From Sphaerodactylus townsendi (lineage: Eukaryota), in contig NC_059430.1 of the NCBI RefSeq assembly GCF_021028975.2, positions 114,576,001 to 114,640,000 on the forward strand: a DNA stretch of 64,000 bases, in the 5' to 3' direction. This document shows, piece after piece, positions 7,971 to 51,814 of the stretch; within the stretch, counting starts at the first letter, position 1; each line of letters begins with the position of its first letter. The translations under genes and the position numbers were made by a program. The notes beneath the pieces are model-generated. The model searched no databases. It worked only from the letters and a program-made list of their open reading frames with translations, and was not told the DNA's origin.

Positions 7971-8093
7971 TCATTCGCGCTGCTCCATCTTCACTTTCGG
8001 GGGCCTCAAAAAGGTCCTGTTTTTCTTCTCTTTCTTCCCTTTCGTATTTGCTTGGAAGTTCCTCCAGCTGTCGACACGGCCATCCCGACTCTC
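7971..8093 (-). CDS. DNAJC8: DNAJC8 last coding exon (ESRDGRVDSWRNFQANTKGKKEKKNRTFLRPPKVKMEQRE*)
   Basis: TAG acceptor, 123 nt ending in TGA; joined CDS is 753 nt = 250 aa with no frameshift. Confidence 0.97.
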   Translation of the reverse strand, partial: ESRDGRVDSWRNFQANTKGKKEKKNRTFLRPPKVKMEQRE

Positions 8094-22598: not shown

Positions 22599-22836
22599 CT
22601 GGCAAACCAGACATTTCCATCAGCACATCCACATAAACTAACGAATCTACATTGCTTAAGCGACTAGAGCTCAAGGCAAATTAAAATAAATAGGATAACA
22701 AAGCAACAACCACCCAAAACCACATTCACTTTCATAAATGCAACTGAGAGACACCATCAGTTTCTTTCTCCCTAGCTCCCTACAGTGTAGTCACCCAGAC
22801 CTGTTTGCACAATGCACACAAAAGACGTGGAAGTAC

Positions 22837-22903
22837 CTTCAAATGCTTTCTGGGCTCTGTCGGGATCATCCTGGTTTTTGTCAGGATGCACCAATATGGA
22901 CAA
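22837..22903 (-). CDS. DNAJC8: DNAJC8 exon 4 (LSILVHPDKNQDDPDRAQKAFE), J-domain HPD motif
   Basis: AG/GT bounded, 67 nt, contains the HPD signature. Confidence 0.97.
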
Positions 22904-23197
22904 CTGCAAAAGAAAATCAAAGGATTCCTATCACTAAAAAAATTAAAAAGTGCAGTATATGACTTTCATGGAAACAGGACACCCACCTTCTTACCCTGCA
23001 TAGTTTGTCAATAAAATGACACTCAGGCATTTGAAGGTAACTTTTCGTTCTTCGAGGAAAACACTTTCCTAGACCAGTCCCCTCCCCCCGCCCACCCCCC
23101 CACAAATTCAGCTTGTTAGTCAACCAGCTTCCTCCACTCTGTGCAATAATTCAAGGAAGTCACTTCCAACAGCAGTATTCACTAGTGTGGTGTATTC

Positions 23198-25127: not shown

Positions 25128-26170
25128 CTAAAAGAGATCAGCAGTGAAATGATAAGCAGCTGCATTTCCAAGTGGTTCTACATCTCCATAACTTCCCACG
25201 ATTTTCTCTGGCAAAAAAAAAGGGGGGAGGGAGCATCGTAACAGATATTATTGTGGCAAGAAATTACTAGCACGACACCTATGTTCGTCTTCCTAGAATT
25301 ACATGTAAGGTCATTAAACAGATATTCTTCTCTCTTTCTCTTATGGGTGAGGCTGAGAAATCAACAGGGGTCTTGACAAATGAAATGCCTTAGAAAACCA
25401 TTCCCATTCCAAGAAAGGAAGTTGTACTGCTCTACACGTGGGCTACAGGGATAACAGTTTATATACATATAAGAGCTCCACCAAACATAACACCCTCCCC
25501 AATAAGTGAAAAAACACCATAAGAAACGGGTGGGTCCTCTTTTTCTGCTGCACTCAATAGAATGCCTGTAATAAATAGCTGTTTACAAGGGTTTTGCAAG
25601 GGTTTCTGCACATTCAGCAACTCAGGCAGAAGGAGTGATGAAGATGTTTTCCCTTATCCACGTAAAAAAGGTACACAAAGTGAATGCTGGAACTAGAAAT
25701 CAAAGAGGTAGTTCCTATTGGCATGGAAGAAAGCATCTGCTATGAACTGGACCTGGCCTGTCAAATGAACAGTTCTCAAATAGCCTGTCAGTAGTGGGCA
25801 TCATACATTATATAGCAGCATGGTAATAATAACAACAGTTATGTGCCATCAAGTAACAACTGACTTATGGCAACTGCAGGACTACAGTGTTTTCAAGGCA
25901 GGAAAAGAGGAGGGGTGTTTCGCTACTGCCTTCCTCTGCATAGCAACTCCAGTCTTTCATGGTGGTCTCCCACCCAAGTACTACTGTGGCTGATCTTGCT
26001 TAACTTCCAAGCTCTGATAAGCTCAGGCTAGCCAGTACTATTCATGCTGCCACTAGTAGGACCAGCATTGTACAAATAAAAAATCCAGTGTCTGTCCCAA
26101 ATGCATTTTAAATCAAACAAGCAAACAGCCAGAAGGCCTAGCAGAATTGTAGTATGAAGACAATTCCTAC

Positions 26171-26272
26171 CTCAAATGGATTCAGGTTGAAATAGGATGC
26201 TCCAGGCCTAGTAAGCCTCTCGATCTGATTTTTTGATGTTAAGACAGAGTCTCGTTTTTCTATTTGTTTCAC
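26171..26272 (-). CDS. DNAJC8: DNAJC8 exon 2 (VKQIEKRDSVLTSKNQIERLTRPGASYFNLNPFE)
   Basis: AG/GT bounded, 102 nt, translation near-identical to vertebrate DNAJC8. Confidence 0.97.
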
Positions 26273-26700
26273 CTGCAACGTCAGATCCTCTGTTAATAAC
26301 ACCTACAAAGCTAGCTGATGACATTAATGGACAGTAGATTCAGGAAAGGGAAAAAGATACTACTTTACATATTGAACAATGAATTTTACAAATAGTTCTG
26401 TGGGTTAATTTTACTCAAGTCAAGATGGAACTTTAAAGGCTAACAACACTTATTCCAACATGTGTTTTTGTTAGTCTGAACTTGCTGCATCAAATGTGTG
26501 TAGTGGACATCCATGGAAATTTATTTTACATTTATCCACTCTGTGCATCTGATGCAGTGTACTTTTACTCACAAAAGCTCAAGACAGAATAAGGTGCCCC
26601 TGGATCTCTGCCAAACAGGATTAAGGAACTTGTGGAGCTCAGCGCCACACGCCGAATAAACAGTCAATTAAGCTTTAAAGAAGTGATTGGGCAAGTTTAT

Positions 26701-27128: not shown

Positions 27129-27416
27129 AACAACAAGAAGAAGAGTTTAGATTTATATCCCCCCCTTTCTCAAGGGGCTTACAATCTCCTTGCCCTTCCC
27201 CCCTCACAACAAACACCCTGTGAGGCAGTGGGGGCTGAGAGATCTCTGAAGAGCTGTGACTAGCCCAGGGTCACCCAGCTGGCATGTGCTGGAGTGCACC
27301 AACTAATCTAGTTCCCCAGATAAGCCAGCACAGATCAAGTGTCAGAGCGGGGAATCAAACCCGGTTCCCCAGATTAGAGTGCACCTGCTCTTAACCACTA
27401 CACCGCGCTGGCTCTC
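27129..27416 (-). mobile_element. Squam3-like SINE
   Basis: Same family consensus. Confidence 0.85.
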
Positions 27417-27479
27417 ATAGGATGAAAGAGCATGGTGGAGAGCTAAATGTAGAAGTGCCTTGGACTGAAAAGCTTTCAG

Positions 27480-28180
27480 TACCGGCCACACTCAGACGCG
27501 AGCCTGGCCCGCTCCCAAAACCAAAATCCACCAATTTCAGAAGCCAATTTCTGCCATGGCAACGACCGAAACAGGGGGACTAGACCCTTCCCTGCCCCAG
27601 GGAGAGAGACCAGGGCTTCCAGGCAGGCCTCCTCGCTCAGAGTCGGGCCCGCAGCTCATCCAAGAAAGGCAGAAATGGGAGACGGGGGGGCAAAGAGCGA
27701 CGGCGAACCGGCCGCGGGGGCGGGGCTCGGATCCCACTTGATACCTCGGAGTAGAAGGTGAGAAACGCCTCTTCGGCGCCGCCTCCAGCTTCTCGCTCGC
27801 CCGGAGCCGCCATCTTTTGCGCCACGTGACCTTTGCCCCTCCCGCCACGTGACGCGGTTCCGAAGGCGTCATCGGGATAACGTTCTCCCTCCACCTCTCT
27901 CGCTCTTCCCCCCCTTTCCTGTCTTCCTCTTTGACGACGCCTATGTTCACAAAACACTTCCGATCCCCTATCGACGCGGATTTACATTAGACCTGTCGGT
28001 TGGCTTTCGTAATGCGAGGCCTAAAGTAGCACCTAGAAATAGGGTTTGCTAAGAGAGGCGGAGGATGGCCTCCTTGTCCTTGGCCCAAATCAAAAGCCGC
28101 CCTCCCGCCCCAAAAACCCCTGTTTGATGCAGTTTTGATGGCTCGTAAACCAAGGAAGCCGGAGCGTCGGTTTTTAACCG
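27480..28180. promoter_or_regulatory. DNAJC8 CpG-island promoter with two GTCACGTGGC E-boxes and a YY1-type motif over the ATG
   Basis: CpG-rich; GCCACGTGAC at 27821-27830 and 27844-27853; GCCGCCATCTT overlapping the start codon. Confidence 0.75.
27745..27813 (-). CDS. DNAJC8: DNAJC8 coding exon 1 (MAAPGEREAGGGAEEAFLTFYSE)
   Basis: ATG at 27813-27811 in AAGATGGCG context; matches DNAJC8 N-terminus (EEAFxTFYSE); GT donor at 27744; 69 nt. Confidence 0.96.
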
Positions 28181-28644
28181 GAAATTTAAACTTAGTTTGT
28201 ATGAAACATGCAGTCTTCATATGTTTCTAACTCAATGGGCGGCTCCAGGTTTTTCAAAACAAAGCAGAAGTCGAGTGGCGCTATTTTATTTTGTATTAAA
28301 CATTGCATATTATTACCTACATTGCGTATTGCTTAAAACGATTGTTGTAGACTACCTATCTTTGCTGTGTTGGTTCTCTGATCTTGTATGGCAATAAATA
28401 TTGAACTGAGTGGCAATTTAAATTTGAAAGGCTTCAGGAACACCAGGCATTAATGATGCGTGTGCTGTCTAGGCCCCGCTGCAGGCGCGCCCGGCGCCCC
28501 GCTCCCCTCGCGCTCTTCTGAGCTCCCTGGCCCGAGCAGGGCGCCGCGCGCCTCAGGCAACCACCGGGCGGCTTCCTGCGCCACGCCCCGCGCGTCGGCC
28601 AATCGGCGCCCAGCACCCAACCCACGGTGCTCGGGAGAGCCGAC

Positions 28645-29028
28645 CCCTTTCCCGGCGCCCCTCCCCCGGACCACGGCCCCCTGAGCCTGCCGTGGTTAGA
28701 AGGGCGTTGCCACCGTTATAGCGATCATTGTATCGATCGATATACAGATCGGTATAGCGATCGGTATAGCGATCGGATTTGATTCCTTGAGGGGATCGAT
28801 CGTTCATTGGAAGCGATCGTTGGTATCGGATGAGCCATGTACTCGATCGCTTATACCGTGGATCGGTTATGCCTCTCGATCGGTATTATTACATATCGAT
28901 ACATGATCAGATAACCGATCGTTGTATCGATTGCTATAACGATCGCTATAACGATCGTTATAATGGTGGCAACGGCCCTTCTAACCACCGCAGGCTCAGG
29001 GGGCCGTGGTGGGGGAGCGGAAAAGGGG
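28645..29028. repeat. Foldback palindrome: GC-rich inverted arms enclosing a 12-bp-period CGATCG-NTATAN array
   Basis: Left arm CCACGGCCCCCTGAGCCTGCCGTGGTTAGAAGGGCGTTGCCACCGTTATAGCGATC matches the reverse complement of 28953-29009; GATC at 28723/735/747/759/771 and 28905/917/(929 GATT)/941/953. Confidence 0.92.
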
Positions 29029-29976
29029 CTGCTGCCAGTGTCAGCACAGTATCAGCTGTCTGAGAACGTTATAACAATGCTTAGAACCATGAGAATTAGA
29101 ACCTGAGAAATGGGGGGGGGGAGGTCGGCGCTTGTAATTCATGACTTTGGCCACCGGAGGGCAGCAGCGGCCCCCCTGCCCAAAGAGACTCCGACGACAC
29201 GCCACAACCTGGACGTGCGGCTTCGTGTGAAGGCGGCGCCTGGGAAAGGCCGCCCTGGGTTCTCGGCTCTATCGTCCAAACGGGCTGCCAGCTCAACGAG
29301 GCTTGGGAAGTTAGCGGAATCACCCCATCACATCCACCTGAATCACAAGATTTAGTTGTTGAACACTGAATATAATCTAGTTTTATAAAGTTAATATATA
29401 GTCTCCACACTTGAATATTAGATGATTTTAAAATACACTTTTATATTCCTAATATACTTTTATAAAATGTTAAAAGAAAGTATGTGGAACGGCCTGGCTC
29501 CAGGGTAAGAAAAGTTAAAAGCCTGCTATTGGATGGAATGCAGGAGAGATGGGAGTATGATGCTTATCATATCGCATTTGATTTGTGTATTTCTTATGTT
29601 TGTCGGTAAAAGCACACCTGCTCTAAGATAATGAGCTAGCAGAAGAAAAGGTCAAGGGTTAGAAGGGAATAATAGGTAATGTAGTCGTTTATAATCTTGT
29701 TTTTATATTTGAATGCTTTTATATTTTAGCTAATAATGAAACGTAAAGAATATGTTAATCACTCACGTTCAATGTATGTATCCTAAGTATGTTATATAGG
29801 CATTGAATGTTTCATGTGTAATGAATCTTTGTATAATCCTTTAATATGGTCAAAAGAAAATGTCTTTCAGTTTGAAGTGTAAAACATTTTGCCTCTCTGC
29901 AGAAGACCCTAATCAGTAAGATGGTGCTAGTAGGAGCTGTCCAGCAGAAACTCCATTTAGAAAATCTGATTGGGCT

Positions 29977-30848
29977 TCATAAGAACATAAGAACTAGCCT
30001 GCTGGATCAGACCAGAGTCCATCTAGTCCAGCATTCTGCTACTCGCAGTGGCCCACCAGGTGCCTTTGGGAGCTCACATGCAGGATGTGAAAGCAATGGC
30101 CTTCTGCTGCTGCTGCTGCTCCTGAGCACCTGGTCTGCTAAGGCATTTGCAATCTGAGATCAAGGAGGATCAAGATTGGTAGCCATAGATTGACTTCTCC
30201 TCCATAAATCTGTCCAAGCCCTTTTTAAAGCTATCCAGGTTAGTAATATCACCTCACCCTCCTGTGGCAGCATATTCCTAAACACCAATCATTGACATTG
30301 AAAGTGAAGAAGTGTTTCCTTTCTCTATTAGTCCTGCACTCCTTCCCCAGCATTTTCCCATGAATGCCCCCCTTGGTTCTAGTATTGTGAGAAAGAGAGA
30401 AAAAATTTCTCTCTGTCAACAACATTTTCTACCCCATGCATAATTTTTTTTATAGACTTTCCAATCATATCCCCCCTCAGACGTCTCCTCTCCAAACTAA
30501 AGAGTCCCAAACGCTGCAGCCTCTCCTCATAAGGAAGGTGCTCCAATCCTTCAATCATCATCCCTCAAGGTTGCCTCTTAATCTGCACTTTTTCTATCTC
30601 TTCGATATCCTTTTTGAGATGTGGTGACCAGAACTGAACACAGTAGTCCAAGTGCGGTCGCACCACTGCTTTATATAAGGGCATGACAATCCTTGCAGTT
30701 TTATTATCAACTCCTTTCCTAATGATCCCCAGCATAGAGTTTGCCTTTTTCACAGCTGCCATGCATTGAGTTGACATTCCCATGGAACTATCAACTAAGA
30801 CGCCCAAATCCCTTTCCTGGTCTGTGACTGATAGCACTGACCCCTGTA
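29977..30848 (-). mobile_element. CR1 LINE 3' fragment, same subfamily as 5752-6362
   Basis: ERDLGVLVDSS...KANSMLGIIRK...VRPHLDYCVQFWSP; 3' end nearly identical to the 5752 copy. Confidence 0.93.
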
Positions 30849-33467: not shown

Positions 33468-34029
33468 CAGAACAGCTAGATTCAAGTCCAGTAGCACTTA
33501 GAGACCGAGAAGATTTTGGGGGTATAAGCTTTTGAGAGTTAGACAAATAAATGTATACTCCCAAAATCTTGTTAGCCTCTAGGTCCTACTGGACTCAAAA
33601 ACATGCTGCGAACACGTTTGAACGTCCTCTGCCCAGGGATTGTTTTACCTCCAACACCACGACCTGCTTTCGATTCTACACCTTCATTTAAGGCAGTGAT
33701 GGCGAACCGTTTGGGTTCAGCTTGTTAAAAATGTGGAAAATGCCCAACTTGACTCCTTTGGTGATTCTCCACTCCCCACTCCCCAACAAAAGAGAAGCAA
33801 TTATTTGCACATTCATTTATTCAGCAAATAAAAAATACAGTCCAATCATGAGTGGTGCTATGCATTATATAAAGAAATGCCAAACAGTTGCAAAAATGAC
33901 TCCGACTCAAACAGGAAGAATAGTGTTGGTGAATCCAGGTGTCCGTGTCACCCAAAGCGTCACCTTTGACAGATTTGTCATAGGTTCACCATCACTGGTT
34001 GATGGTTTGTAAGTCGCTCTAGCCCCACC

Positions 34030-34111
34030 CTCCACTGCCTCTCTATGCTCTGTCTGCCTCACGACCTTCTCTCCGCTGCCTCTCTATGCTCTGTCTGCCT
34101 CACGACCTTCT
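34030..34111. repeat. 41-bp tandem duplication in the ATP5IF1 promoter
   Basis: CTCC[A/G]CTGCCTCTCTATGCTCTGTCTGCCTCACGACCTTCT x2, one mismatch. Confidence 0.95.
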
Positions 34112-34269
34112 CCAGACGGTCGTCCATTGCCCCGCCTCCTCTTCTTCCCGTGCCCTGATTGGCCCTTACCCTCTCTCCCCTAATGCCCCTCCTCGTCCGC
34201 TGTCACTCCGGAAGGAGTCTCCTGCGCTGGGAGGCGTGGCTTCCCATCTCCGCCAAGGGCAGACCTGAG

Positions 34270-34368
34270 ATGGCTGCGGTGGGGCTGTCTCTGAGGAGCT
34301 GCTTGCGGGGCGCGCTGGCATTGCCGGGCCAACAGCGGGCGTGGAACTCGGGTTCCGGCGCCGACCAG
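34270..34368 (+). CDS. ATP5IF1: ATP5IF1 exon 1 (mitochondrial presequence MAAVGLSLRSCLRGALALPGQQRAWNSGSGADQ)
   Basis: ATG in GAGATGG context, Arg/Leu/Ser-rich presequence, CAG|GTACGG donor, 99 nt. Confidence 0.9.
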
Positions 34369-34531
34369 GTACGGCGAGGCCCGCTCCCCTTTCCCTGAGG
34401 TTCGGGCCGGGAGGATTTGCCTGACCCCCGGGTAAGGAGGAAGAGGCGAGCCCTGCGGGGTGCGAGGAGGGGGCCGCGGCGGCCGGTGCGGTTCCTCCTC
34501 CTCCTTCCCGTCCTTTTCTCTTTCTCCTCAG

Positions 34532-34644
34532 TTAGGCGAGCTGGGCAAAGGTGCGGGCAAAGGCGGCGGAGGCGGCGGGACGATCCGTGAAGCTGGCGGC
34601 TCCTTCGGGAAACGGGAGGCGGCCCTGGAAGAGCGTTATTTCAA
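34532..34644 (+). CDS. ATP5IF1: ATP5IF1 exon 2 ([38 protein letters not shown]), inhibitory domain
   Basis: Strong pyrimidine tract plus CAG; IF1 signature IREAGGxFGKRE...EERYF; 113 nt. Confidence 0.96.
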
Positions 34645-35610
34645 GTAGGCGCCTCTGGCTGTGGTTCAGGAAAGGCTTGGGCTTGTGAACTGGGCAGGCT
34701 TGTCTCACTGGAAAGGCGGTGGGACTGTCAGCCTTCTGGGGCTTTCGCTGCGCTAAATTGCTTCGTCTTCCCCATGCATCAAAGTGTCTGTATTTCCTCC
34801 TTTGCTTTAAGTAAATTGGTTGTAAGGGCACAGGAAGAGCGCGTTTGGATCAGGCCAGGGGCCCATCTAGGCTGGCTTGCTGTTTAGTTCATGCGATTGC
34901 CCTGGAGCACAGGTGTCAAACTCGTGGCCCTCCAGATGTTCATGAACTACAATTCCCATCAGCCCTTGCCAGTATAACCAATGCTCATGTTGGAAGGGAC
35001 TGATGGGAATTGTAGTTCATGAACATCTGGAGGGACGACGAAGTAAGGCAGAGAGAATGAGGATCACCCCTGCTGCTGCAGCCTTTCAGCACTAGTAGCC
35101 AGTTCTCTCTATATGGGGGCTTATGGCTATTAGTCTTGAATATGTTGCAAAACTGCATGTTCTCCAATACATTGGTTTATGGTATTTTGGTCTGGTGAGT
35201 GGTAACCTTCAAAAAAGGCTTTTTCTGGCACCCAGATTCCATTTTTGTGTACTTTAAGGCCAGGGTAGCCCAATCTATGCCTATGAATGATAATAATAAT
35301 AGTCCTGAATGATTGAATAAATAATATTTAAATGAATGAATAATATTACACTCCAGAGGGCTTTCTGGTGGCGTGGGGAGGGTGAAACCTCCTGAAAACT
35401 GCGCTGCCAGAAAGCCCTCCAGTGGGCTTAATGGAGTTAAACCACCTGAAAAGTGGTATAAGTCCATGGCTGTGGTGTAAATGGCCGCAAATCCAGGGTG
35501 GAAGCCAACTAATATCTGCTCCACCCCTTGGTCATTTAATCCTCTTCATCAAGGGGGTTCATAAACAGGGACTTTTGCAAACTCAATCATAGCTCCAAAC
35601 ATTGTTGTCC

Positions 35611-51634: not shown

Positions 51635-51814
51635 NNNNNNNNNNNNNNNNNNNNNNNNNNNNNNNNNNNNNNNNNNNNNNNNNNNNNNNNNNNNNNNNNN
51701 NNNNNNNNNNNNNNNNNNNNNNNNNNNNNNNNNNNNNNNNNNNNNNNNNNNNNNNNNNNNNNNNNNNNNNNNNNNNNNNNNNNNNNNNNNNNNNNNNNNN
51801 NNNNNNNNNNNNNN
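51635..51814. other. Assembly gap (180 N) hiding the HNRNPR exon 2 acceptor and start codon
   Basis: Run of N directly followed by in-frame ERLDEIFQT. Confidence 0.95.

What the first reader, a model, noticed from the sequence alone, without database searches (positions are those of the whole stretch)
28645..29028. Foldback palindrome with a 12-bp-periodic CGATCG array in the DNAJC8/ATP5IF1 divergent intergenic region
Seen: GC-rich arms of about 60-80 bp are near-perfect inverted repeats. Inside each arm are five 12-bp units (GATC at 28723/735/747/759/771 and 28905/917/[929]/941/953). Each unit is a palindromic CGATCG plus a near-palindromic NTATAN (e.g. CGATCG-GTATAG, CGATCG-TTATAA), so the array is self-complementary at the unit level as well as overall. 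I count 10 intact CGATCG in about 225 bp. The variants CGATCA, TGATCA and CGATTG are the changes CpG deamination would produce. The mirror ORFs 28553-28807(-) and 28830-29063(+), both with DRYNDRYNGGN, reflect the symmetry. No TSD or transposase was found. Known: CGATCG has two CpGs and is rare in methylated vertebrate DNA; long palindromes can extrude cruciforms; foldback transposons have modular arms with tandem protein-binding sites. Inference: this may be an unclassified foldback/MITE family, a phased multi-CpG platform (a methylation-sensitive switch beside a housekeeping promoter), or a hairpin-RNA locus. I do not recognise it as a known element.
Basis: partly seen in the sequence, partly recalled or inferred. 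Interest (0 to 1): 0.8.

Follow-up and report, generated by a model that had tools for sequence, protein, structure and literature searches.

The report
Foldback repeat with CGATCG arrays
The palindrome is real, but it looks like an old copy of a low-copy dispersed repeat built like a miniature foldback transposon, sitting in the CpG-rich zone upstream of DNAJC8; it is a curiosity, not yet a new kind of element or switch.

Summary
Window 28644-29028 is an imperfect palindrome. Each arm has a 65-73 bp GC-rich outer part (62 of 65 aligned bases identical) and five 12-bp units (TATAGCGATCGG type). A 126-bp spacer, also rich in CGATCG, separates the arms. Ten of the window's 11 CGATCG sites lie within 224 bp. 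It is not an assembly foldback: the arms differ by substitutions and indels, the two flanks are unrelated, and independent contigs cover the left arm in two species.

Whole-genome contigs of three runs (two closely related species) pile up over 28540-29059 at roughly 5-25 times single-copy depth, although one run has no or sub-baseline depth over the spacer and right array. So this is one copy of a dispersed family, not a unique regulatory invention. Its class is unresolved: there is no TSD at the palindrome edges and no transposase. A weak 7-bp direct repeat brackets 28471-29054.

CpGs are kept (observed/expected 2.46). The simplest reason is its place about 0.85 kb upstream of DNAJC8 exon 1; ATP5IF1 is about 5 kb away. 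In one RNA run the palindrome is almost silent, but the GC-rich segment to its left gives minus-strand RNA. No repeat library (Dfam/Repbase) could be searched. Interest is modest.

The parts
28644..28716 (.). Left outer arm: GC-rich (74% GC), no tandem structure; the 'flanking domain' of the foldback
   Evidence: Aligns with the reverse complement of 28964-29028 at 62 of 65 identical bases, with 8 nt of indels. A 35-nt block, 28670-28704, matches with one mismatch.
28717..28776 (.). Left array: five 12-bp units TATAGCGATCAT / TGTATCGATCGA / TATACAGATCGG / TATAGCGATCGG / TATAGCGATCGG
   Evidence: Units printed in register; TRF period 12 and 24; GATC every 12 bp.
28777..28902 (.). Middle domain: a spacer that is not clearly palindromic, with six more (C/G)GATCG sites at irregular 4-30 bp spacing, one TATCGATA and a 16-bp-period stretch
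   Evidence: Sequence; GATC list and spacing; TRF period 16 at 28842-28884. Mirror alignment of its two halves is only marginal: 55 of 1000 shuffles reach the score.
28903..28963 (.). Right array: five 12-bp units, read on the reverse strand as TTATAACGATCG / TTATAGCGATCG / TTATAGCAATCG / ATACAACGATCG / GTTATCTGATCA
   Evidence: TRF period 12 at 28911-28963. 47 of 56 bases identical to the left array.
28964..29028 (.). Right outer arm: GC-rich mirror of 28644-28716
28472..28643 (-). GC-rich segment (79% GC, CpG observed/expected 1.0) left of the palindrome. It is also multi-copy. On the minus strand it carries an inverted CCAAT box (ATTGG), GGGGCGTGG and CAGGAAGC, and it is transcribed on the minus strand in the sister species
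   Evidence: Contigs of X1 and X5 both stop at 28501. Depth in 28540-28643 is 335/129/204, against single-copy depths of about 25 (X1), 10-20 (X5) and 26 (X8). At 28626, G>A is seen in 14, 9 and 18 contigs. RNA run X22 has first-mate-minus depth 2.4-4.6 over 28332-28643 (all). Motifs read; composition.
28464..28471 (.). Left copy of a candidate direct repeat, GCTGTCTA. It may be a target-site duplication of a 583-bp unit 28472-29054; weak evidence
   Evidence: the 7-mer is exact and the 8-mer matches 7 of 8. It coincides with the repeat start inferred from the unitig break (28501 minus 29 = 28472, assuming Logan's word length is 31). Chance estimate 0.05-0.12. There is no inverted repeat at these ends.
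29055..29062 (.). Right copy of the candidate direct repeat, GCTGTCTG. It lies where depth steps up 4-6 fold into a different, more abundant repeat (29060-29787)
   Evidence: Depth 206 to 950 (X1), 30 to 188 (X5) and 328 to 1198 (X8) between bins 28956-29059 and 29060-29163.

Best explanation
The palindrome is the core of one old, immobile copy of a low-copy interspersed repeat family, roughly 5-25 copies per genome, shared by at least two closely related lizard species.

Its build is that of a miniature foldback-type element: two inverted arms, each with an outer unique domain plus a tandem array, around a non-coding middle domain.

The 12-bp units (a palindromic CGATCG core plus a TATA-like spacer, one unit per helical turn or so) are most simply read as multimerised sites for a dimeric sequence-specific DNA-binding protein of the mobile element, a transposase or accessory protein. 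Known parallels are the tandem repeats with extra transposase sites in Galileo and foldback TIRs, and the subterminal motif arrays of Harbinger and hAT elements. This step is inferred, not shown.

The copy landed, or was retained, in the CpG-rich zone 0.85 kb upstream of DNAJC8. Germline hypomethylation there would explain why its CpGs have not decayed. The GC-rich, also repeated, segment on its left now behaves as a small promoter-like block that gives minus-strand RNA running towards DNAJC8. The palindrome itself is nearly untranscribed.

Shown: the symmetry, the periodicity, the CGATCG enrichment, the extra depth (in two of the three whole-genome runs over the arrays), presence in a sister species, CpG retention and the flanking RNA.

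Inferred: mobility, the protein-binding role of the units, hypomethylation and promoter activity.
For: Anatomy.

Family. In three whole-genome contig sets (X1 and X5 have 0 differences in the flank; X8 is a sister species about 97% alike), summed contig depth over 28540-29059 is 129-368 (X1) and 118-725 (X8), against about 25 for the single-copy flank. At 28626, 14/9/18 separate contigs carry A where the window has G. Unitigs of X1 and X5 both break at 28501.

Not an artefact. The arms differ by 12 substitutions and 8-10 nt of indels. The flanks are unrelated to each other. An X1 contig covers 28656-28804 and an X8 contig covers 28582-28739.

Foldback layout. A flanking domain, a tandem-repeat domain and a middle domain without coding capacity are described for foldback elements, with tandem repeats thought to add transposase binding sites (PMC4079207). 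A 9-bp subterminal binding motif is reported for Harbinger3_DR (PMC9710019).

CpG. Observed/expected is 2.46 in 28717-28963, against 0.36 for the window. CpG columns are identical between the arms in 25 of 28 cases, against 84 of 93 for other columns. A CpG-rich zone runs from 27400 to 29300.

RNA. Minus-strand depth is 2.4-4.6 over 28332-28643, with the sister species' own variants at 28455 and 28481. It is 2.3 on DNAJC8 exon 1 and at most 0.56 per strand on the palindrome.
Against: No TSD at the palindrome's edges. No transposase or other element protein nearby: the ORFs have no Pfam family.

The multi-copy stretch is asymmetric. It runs about 170 bp beyond the left arm but only about 26 bp beyond the right arm, so the palindrome is not terminal in the unit that was copied.

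The only bracketing direct repeat (GCTGTCT) is weak (chance 0.05-0.12) and has no terminal inverted repeats.

Depth summed over short contigs is a rough copy-number proxy. One same-species run (X5) has no or sub-baseline depth over the spacer and the right array (0 and 4.9), so extra copies of the arrays are seen in two of three runs only.

No second copy lies in the 64-kb window, and no copy was seen directly with its flanks. Dfam/Repbase could not be searched.

The binding protein is hypothetical. Methylation was not measured.
Confidence: 0.6

Rival explanations
1. The palindrome is an internal module (U3-type enhancer/promoter region) of a larger repeat unit, for example a solo LTR of about 1.2-1.35 kb spanning about 28466-29814 in minus orientation. 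Transcription would start left of the palindrome and read out towards DNAJC8.
For: The whole stretch 28472-29787 is multi-copy. TG...CA ends are possible at 28466/29814, with a 5-bp flank matching 4 of 5, TGTGC/TGTGT. Depth falls in the last bin, 29788-29891. Minus-strand RNA begins left of the palindrome and crosses 28466 into unique DNA, as read-out from an LTR would. An earlier unchecked note says LTRs of this genome often carry inverted repeats at the TSS (s1-740307).
Against: The TSD match is at chance level: 4 such hits in the scan. All three whole-genome runs show a consistent 4-6 fold depth step at about 29060, which argues that 29060-29787 is a different, more abundant family. There is no AATAAA in the putative R region on the minus strand. 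R-U5 would be only about 90 bp.
Confidence: 0.13
2. It is a host cis-regulatory platform. The phased CGATCG/ATCGAT/TATCG sites would bind a cellular factor (CUT-homeodomain or BED-finger type) and act as an upstream activating, insulating or methylation-sensing module for the GC-rich promoter block at 28472-28643 and/or DNAJC8. The element would be kept by selection, whatever its origin.
For: CpG sites are no more diverged than other sites between the arms, and CpG observed/expected is 2.46. Mismatches between the arms fall mostly next to the CGATCG cores, not in them. The element sits directly upstream of a block transcribed on the minus strand. It is present in the sister species. Five of the window's six ATCGAT and its only TATCGATA lie in the element.
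Against: Multi-copy depth says the sequence was not built at this locus. CpG retention is expected anyway in an unmethylated CpG-island shore. One individual has a CpG-to-TpG change inside a core, at 28774. Conservation is shown only between species about 97% alike, which says nothing about constraint. No factor is known to me that binds CGATCG arrays in vertebrates, and paper searches found none.
Confidence: 0.15
3. It is a hairpin-RNA or small-RNA locus: the palindrome is transcribed and processed.
For: Strong predicted fold, z = -15.8. A weak mir-2001-like hit over the left array.
Against: RNA depth over 28644-29059 is 0-0.56 per strand in the stranded RNA run, lower than the minus-strand depth of the bins just left of it. 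The Rfam hit scores 21.8 bits against a gathering score of 74, E=0.26. The fold follows trivially from the DNA symmetry. Small-RNA libraries were not available.
Confidence: 0.04
4. It is an assembly or chimeric-read foldback artefact that is absent from genomic DNA.
For: Long-read assemblies do make foldback chimeras. One run (X5) has no contig over 28748-28851.
Against: An artefact would give near-identical arms, and flanks that mirror each other. Here the arms are 84-95% alike with indels, the middle is unique, and the flanks are unrelated. Independent short-read contigs cover 28656-28804 (X1), 28582-28739 and 29038-29167 (X8), and the unique flanks on both sides.
Confidence: 0.02

Closest known systems
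Foldback-type DNA transposons (Drosophila FB, Galileo, Tetris; Tm1 in nematodes)
   Same: Long inverted arms made of an outer unique domain plus an internal tandem-repeat domain, a non-coding middle domain, mostly non-autonomous copies and low numbers of complete copies. The tandem repeats are thought to add transposase binding sites (PMC4079207).
   Different: It is ten times smaller: arms of 130 bp against up to 1.7 kb, and units of 12 bp against 10-220 bp. There is no 7-10 bp TSD at the palindrome's edges. The repeated unit extends asymmetrically beyond the left arm. No linked MULE or P-type transposase was found. The host is a vertebrate, and I know of no described squamate foldback family (own knowledge, and one search found none).
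MITEs and non-autonomous hAT or PIF/Harbinger elements with subterminal binding-site arrays
   Same: Short, non-coding and hairpin-forming, with repeated short motifs inside the ends that recruit the element's DNA-binding protein (a 9-bp motif for Harbinger3_DR, PMC9710019). A candidate 7-8 bp direct repeat brackets 28471/2-29054, and 8 bp is the hAT TSD length (own knowledge). First-stage notes report modular foldback hAT MITEs elsewhere in this genome (s1-740402, unchecked).
   Different: There are no terminal inverted repeats at the ends bracketed by that direct repeat, and no TA, TWA or TTAA at the palindrome's edges. The inverted arms are internal on the left side. The motif is a CpG-rich palindrome, unlike the known hAT or Harbinger subterminal motifs that I can recall.
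Clustered CGATA / TATCGATA sites (BEAF-32 and DREF sites) between divergent housekeeping genes in Drosophila
   Same: A dense cluster of short CGAT-containing palindromic sites between head-to-head housekeeping genes. TATCGATA occurs once, and TATCG/CGATA occur six times, in the element. This is a resemblance recalled from own knowledge, not a test.
   Different: The dominant motif here is CGATCG, not CGATA. Vertebrates have no BEAF-32 (own knowledge). The recalled ZBED1 (human DREF) motif has a CGCG core, not CGATCG. No binding data exist. The sequence is multi-copy.

Membership tests
Foldback-type DNA transposon | Long terminal inverted repeats with an outer unique domain and an internal tandem-repeat domain around a middle domain | tested here: met
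   Arms 28644-28774 and 28905-29028, each an outer GC-rich part plus 5 x 12 bp; middle domain 28777-28902. The definition is taken from PMC4079207.
Foldback-type DNA transposon | Target-site duplication (7-10 bp) directly flanking the inverted repeats | tested here: not met
   A scan of all end combinations within 28625-28655 and 29018-29047, with k = 3-10, found nothing better than 6 of 8.
Foldback-type DNA transposon | Dispersed copies at different loci with different flanks | tested here: inconclusive
   Summed contig depth is 5-25 times single copy, and 9-18 distinct contigs share a variant at 28626. But no other copy was seen with its flanks, none is in the window, and run X5 has no or sub-baseline depth over the spacer and right array (0 and 4.9).
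Foldback-type DNA transposon | A related autonomous element encoding a transposase (MULE or P type) in the same genome | not testable with these tools
   The genome cannot be searched here. The local ORFs have no Pfam family.
hAT-type MITE | 8-bp TSD and short terminal inverted repeats at the element's ends | tested here: inconclusive
   GCTGTCTA / GCTGTCTG brackets 28472-29054 (7 of 8; the 7-mer is exact; chance about 0.05-0.12). The two ends bracketed show no inverted repeat, and the best outer inverted match is not significant: 88 of 1000 shuffles reach it.
Solo LTR | TG...CA ends with a 4-6 bp TSD, uniform copy number across the unit, and a polyadenylation signal in R | tested here: not met
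   Only a chance-level 4 of 5 TSD for 28466-29814. A 4-6 fold depth step at about 29060 in all three whole-genome runs. No AATAAA in the candidate R region on the minus strand.
microRNA / structured RNA family (Rfam) | Match to a covariance model at the family's gathering score, and expression | tested here: not met
   The best hit is mir-2001 at 21.8 bits against 74. RNA depth is at most 0.56 per strand over the palindrome. No tRNA-like part.
CpG island | CpG observed/expected above 0.6 with high GC over 200 bp or more | tested here: inconclusive
   The flanking segment 28472-28643 qualifies by composition (79% GC, o/e 1.0) but is only 172 bp long. The arrays have o/e 2.46 but only 42.5% GC, so the CpG comes from the motif, not from island composition. 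Methylation was not measured.

The most novel reading that the evidence does not exclude
The phased CGATCG arrays are a protein-bound platform that the host has kept in use. A repeat-borne module, recognised by a dimeric factor (CUT- or BED-finger-like), would sit directly upstream of a repeat-borne CpG-island-type promoter and set boundary or upstream-promoter activity between DNAJC8 and ATP5IF1. The family would then be a squamate-specific carrier of portable promoter/insulator cassettes.
Probability: 0.08. Interest if true: 0.6.

Novelty: new member of a known kind. Interest (0 to 1): 0.3.

Why it matters
If the family view is right, this is one more unclassified, low-copy repeat of a lizard genome, with an unusually tidy miniature foldback design. 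It would be useful for repeat annotation, and it is an example of how a CpG-rich repeat survives undecayed beside a housekeeping promoter.

It would matter more if the arrays proved to be bound and the adjoining GC-rich block proved to be a repeat-borne promoter feeding DNAJC8. That would be a clean case of a mobile promoter/insulator cassette in a vertebrate.

A 385-bp palindrome next to an essential gene is also a potential fragile or cruciform site. Neither point is established here.

Tried and rejected
- Other copies in the window: blastn of 28600-29100, 28300-28660 and 29030-29900 against the 64-kb window found none.
- Other copies through predicted proteins: the mirror ORF (28553-28807, minus strand) and the 104-aa ORF (29096-29410, minus strand) had no hit in the protein word search, so no related contigs could be fetched.
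- Exact-pattern scans: the conserved arm core was scanned in metagenome contigs, the two-unit array pattern in viral contigs, and the three-core array pattern in metagenome and prokaryotic genome contigs. All gave 0 matches, so there is no microbial or viral look-alike. These collections hold no lizard genomes, so the blanks say nothing about the family.
- Rfam gave nothing and ARAGORN found no tRNA-like part.
- Papers: searches for CGATCG with transposon, for GCGATCGC repeats, for the 11-mers of the unit, and for foldback elements in lizards returned only primers or unrelated work.
- A larger palindrome: the outer inverted match 28454-28467 / 29042-29054 is at chance level, with 88 of 1000 shuffles reaching it.
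- A relation between the two GC-rich flanks 28472-28643 and 29055-29375: none, direct or inverted.
- Mirror symmetry of the middle domain: marginal only.
- The Helitron reading was considered from the sequence and dropped. CTAG at 28469-28472 is followed by A, not T, on the relevant strand, and there is no TC start.
- The bacterial promoter/terminator scan is irrelevant to a vertebrate.
- Earlier-findings look-ups gave no note on this element or motif.

Full report
**What is there.** Reading 28300-29400 and aligning the left half with the reverse complement of the right half gives an imperfect palindrome, with arms 28644-28774 and 28905-29028.
- Each arm has two parts. The outer part is GC-rich (28644-28716 and 28964-29028): 62 of 65 aligned bases are identical, with 8 nt of indels.
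- The inner part is an array of five 12-bp units (28717-28776 and 28903-28963): 47 of 56 bases are identical.
- The commonest unit is TATAGCGATCGG on the left. On the right it is TATAACGATCG(C/T) on the plus strand.
- TRF reports period 12 on both sides.
- The 126-bp middle (28777-28902) is not clearly symmetric; 55 of 1000 shuffles reach its mirror score. It holds six more (C/G)GATCG sites at irregular spacing.
- Ten of the 11 CGATCG sites of the whole 64-kb window lie between 28734 and 28957. No shuffle of the region gave more than three.
- As single-stranded DNA the stretch folds at -129.5 kcal/mol, z = -15.8.
- The two mirror ORFs with DRYNDRYNGGN exist. They have no Pfam family and no relatives, so they are shadows of the symmetry.

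**Where it is.**
- DNAJC8 exon 1 (MAAPGERE...AFLTFYSEV) lies on the minus strand near 27750-27812.
- Further DNAJC8 exons lie at 26141-26302, 22775-22927 (a weak DnaJ Pfam match, E=0.0011, below the curated cut-off) and 7974-8093. The naming of these exons rests on my knowledge of the human protein.
- An ATP5IF1 exon (Pfam IATP, E=3.6e-14) is at 34436-34645 on the plus strand, inside a CpG island at 34000-34700.
- The intergenic interval is thus about 6 kb. The palindrome is 0.85 kb upstream of the DNAJC8 start codon and about 5 kb from ATP5IF1.
- CpG-rich sequence runs from 27400 to 29300 with a dip at 28200-28400.
- To the right lie other repeats, described under Noticed in passing.

**Not an artefact.** A foldback chimera would make near-identical arms and mirrored flanks.
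- Here the arms differ by 12 substitutions and several indels, and the middle is unique.
- The two flanks are unrelated, whether compared directly or inverted.
- In Logan contigs of public whole-genome runs, X1 and X5 match the left flank with 0 differences over 1002 and several hundred bases. They are therefore the same species.
- X8 differs by about 3% and is a sister species.
- An X1 contig covers 28656-28804. X8 contigs cover 28582-28739 and 29038-29167.
- The element therefore exists in independent short-read data and predates the split of the two species.
- X5 has no contig over 28748-28851. I read that as a dropout, since even the locus's own copy is missing there.

**It is multi-copy.** The contig sets total 1.5-3.7 billion letters, which I take to be about genome size.
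- The unique flank has word depth of about 25 (X1), 10-20 (X5) and 26 (X8).
- Over 28540-28643 the summed depth is 335/129/204.
- Over the four bins of the palindrome it is 271, 129, 368, 206 (X1) and 202, 118, 725, 328 (X8).
- At 28626, 14, 9 and 18 separate contigs carry A where the window has G. These are homologous copies, not random GC-rich matches.
- The unique contigs of X1 and X5 both end at exactly 28501. With words of 31 (Logan's word length, assumed) this places the start of repeated sequence near 28472.
- Depth then steps up 4-6 fold at about 29060 in all three runs, into a different and more abundant repeat (29060-29787, about 40-90 times).
- In that repeat, an X8 contig joins 29375 to 29544, so 29376-29543 is private to this copy.

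I conclude that the palindrome belongs to a dispersed family of the order of 5-25 copies.

Caveats:
- Summed depth of short contigs is a rough measure.
- The arrays' extra depth is seen in two of three runs.
- I never saw another copy with its flanks.
- The single calls allowed for finding runs and for laying reads were both used.

**What class?** The layout matches the published scheme for foldback elements: a flanking domain, a tandem-repeat domain, and a middle domain without coding capacity. In that scheme the tandem repeats are thought to multiply transposase binding sites (PMC4079207). Subterminal motif arrays that recruit the element's DNA-binding protein are also known for Harbinger3_DR (PMC9710019).

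Membership, however, fails or stays open.
- No TSD flanks the palindrome.
- The repeated stretch runs about 170 bp beyond the left arm but only about 26 bp beyond the right.
- There is no transposase remnant.
- A 7-bp exact direct repeat, GCTGTCT (28464-28470 and 29055-29061; 7 of 8 as an 8-mer), brackets 28471/2-29054. It coincides with both the unitig break and the depth step. Its chance probability is about 0.05-0.12, and the bracketed ends are not inverted repeats.
- A solo-LTR model (28466-29814) has only a chance-level TSD and conflicts with the depth step.
- Rfam, tRNA and pattern scans of viral, metagenomic and prokaryotic collections gave nothing.
So 'unknown to me' is not 'unknown'.

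**CpG retention.**
- The arrays plus middle have CpG observed/expected 2.46 at 42.5% GC, against 0.36 for the window.
- Between the arms, CpG columns are identical in 25 of 28 cases and other columns in 84 of 93.
- CpGs have therefore not decayed faster than other sites, as they would in methylated vertebrate DNA (established knowledge).
- The plain explanation is germline hypomethylation by position, in the shore of the DNAJC8 island.
- Selection on the cores, or arm-to-arm conversion, cannot be excluded.
- One X1 contig shows C>T at 28774, inside a core. It has 3 differences in 149 bp, while the flank has none. I cannot tell whether that contig is an allele or a close paralogue.

**Transcription.** In the stranded RNA run X22 (sister species; about 6% of the run was read), DNAJC8 exon 1 gives 2.32 first-mate-minus against 0.34 first-mate-plus. 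This calibrates the strand.
- The same orientation dominates over 28332-28643 (3.0, 4.6 and 2.4 against 1.3, 0.6 and 0.6).
- Those reads carry that species' own variants at 28455 and 28481.
- Depth is low between that block and exon 1, and it is 0-0.56 per strand over the palindrome.
- On the minus strand the GC-rich segment carries ATTGG (an inverted CCAAT box), GGGGCGTGG and CAGGAAGC. This is a TATA-less promoter-like set (inference).
- The segment just left of the palindrome therefore seems to start a minus-strand RNA heading towards DNAJC8. Its 3' end or splice partner is unknown.
- This argues against a highly expressed long hairpin RNA. It leaves open that the palindrome acts as an upstream module.

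**Verdict.** This is a real and neat structure. It is most likely one old copy of an unclassified low-copy repeat with miniature foldback architecture, preserved in CpG by its position beside a housekeeping promoter (confidence about 0.6). The regulatory-platform reading keeps a modest probability. The scan's earlier notes mention foldback MITEs and palindromes elsewhere in this genome, but none with this motif. Interest 0.3.

Noticed in passing
window 28332-28643, minus strand: A block of minus-strand RNA in the sister species (depth 2.4-4.6, at least that of DNAJC8 exon 1), separated from exon 1 by low depth. It may be an upstream non-coding first exon of DNAJC8 or a separate promoter-upstream transcript starting in a multi-copy GC-rich segment. 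No splice junction was listed.
   Followed up: partly
window 29060-29787: A different interspersed repeat, at about 40-90 times single-copy depth in three whole-genome runs and expressed on both strands. Other copies join 29375 directly to 29544, so 29376-29543 (AT-rich, 168 bp) is an insertion or variant private to this copy. Its class is unknown: the 104-aa ORF tested (29096-29410, minus strand) has no Pfam family, and there is no tRNA-like part.
   Followed up: partly
window 29978-30370 and 30379-30837: A very high-copy element begins sharply at 29978 (hundreds of contigs diverge just before it). Next to it, on the minus strand, are ORF fragments ending ...[23 protein letters not shown], which I recognise as the C-terminal motif of CR1-type LINE ORF2 (own knowledge; not run against Pfam).
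   Followed up: no
window 27820-27870, minus strand: The DNAJC8 proximal promoter / 5' UTR carries two copies of GTCACGTGGC (CACGTG E-boxes) about 35 bp apart, within about 45 bp upstream of the ATG.
   Followed up: no
window 28656-28804: An X1 contig at single-copy depth differs at 3 of 149 bases here (including a CpG-to-TpG change at 28774) and diverges after 28804, while 1002 bp of adjacent flank show no difference. The palindrome may evolve faster than its surroundings, or a 98% paralogue may exist.
   Followed up: no
window 51635-51814: A run of 180 N (assembly gap or masked).
   Followed up: no
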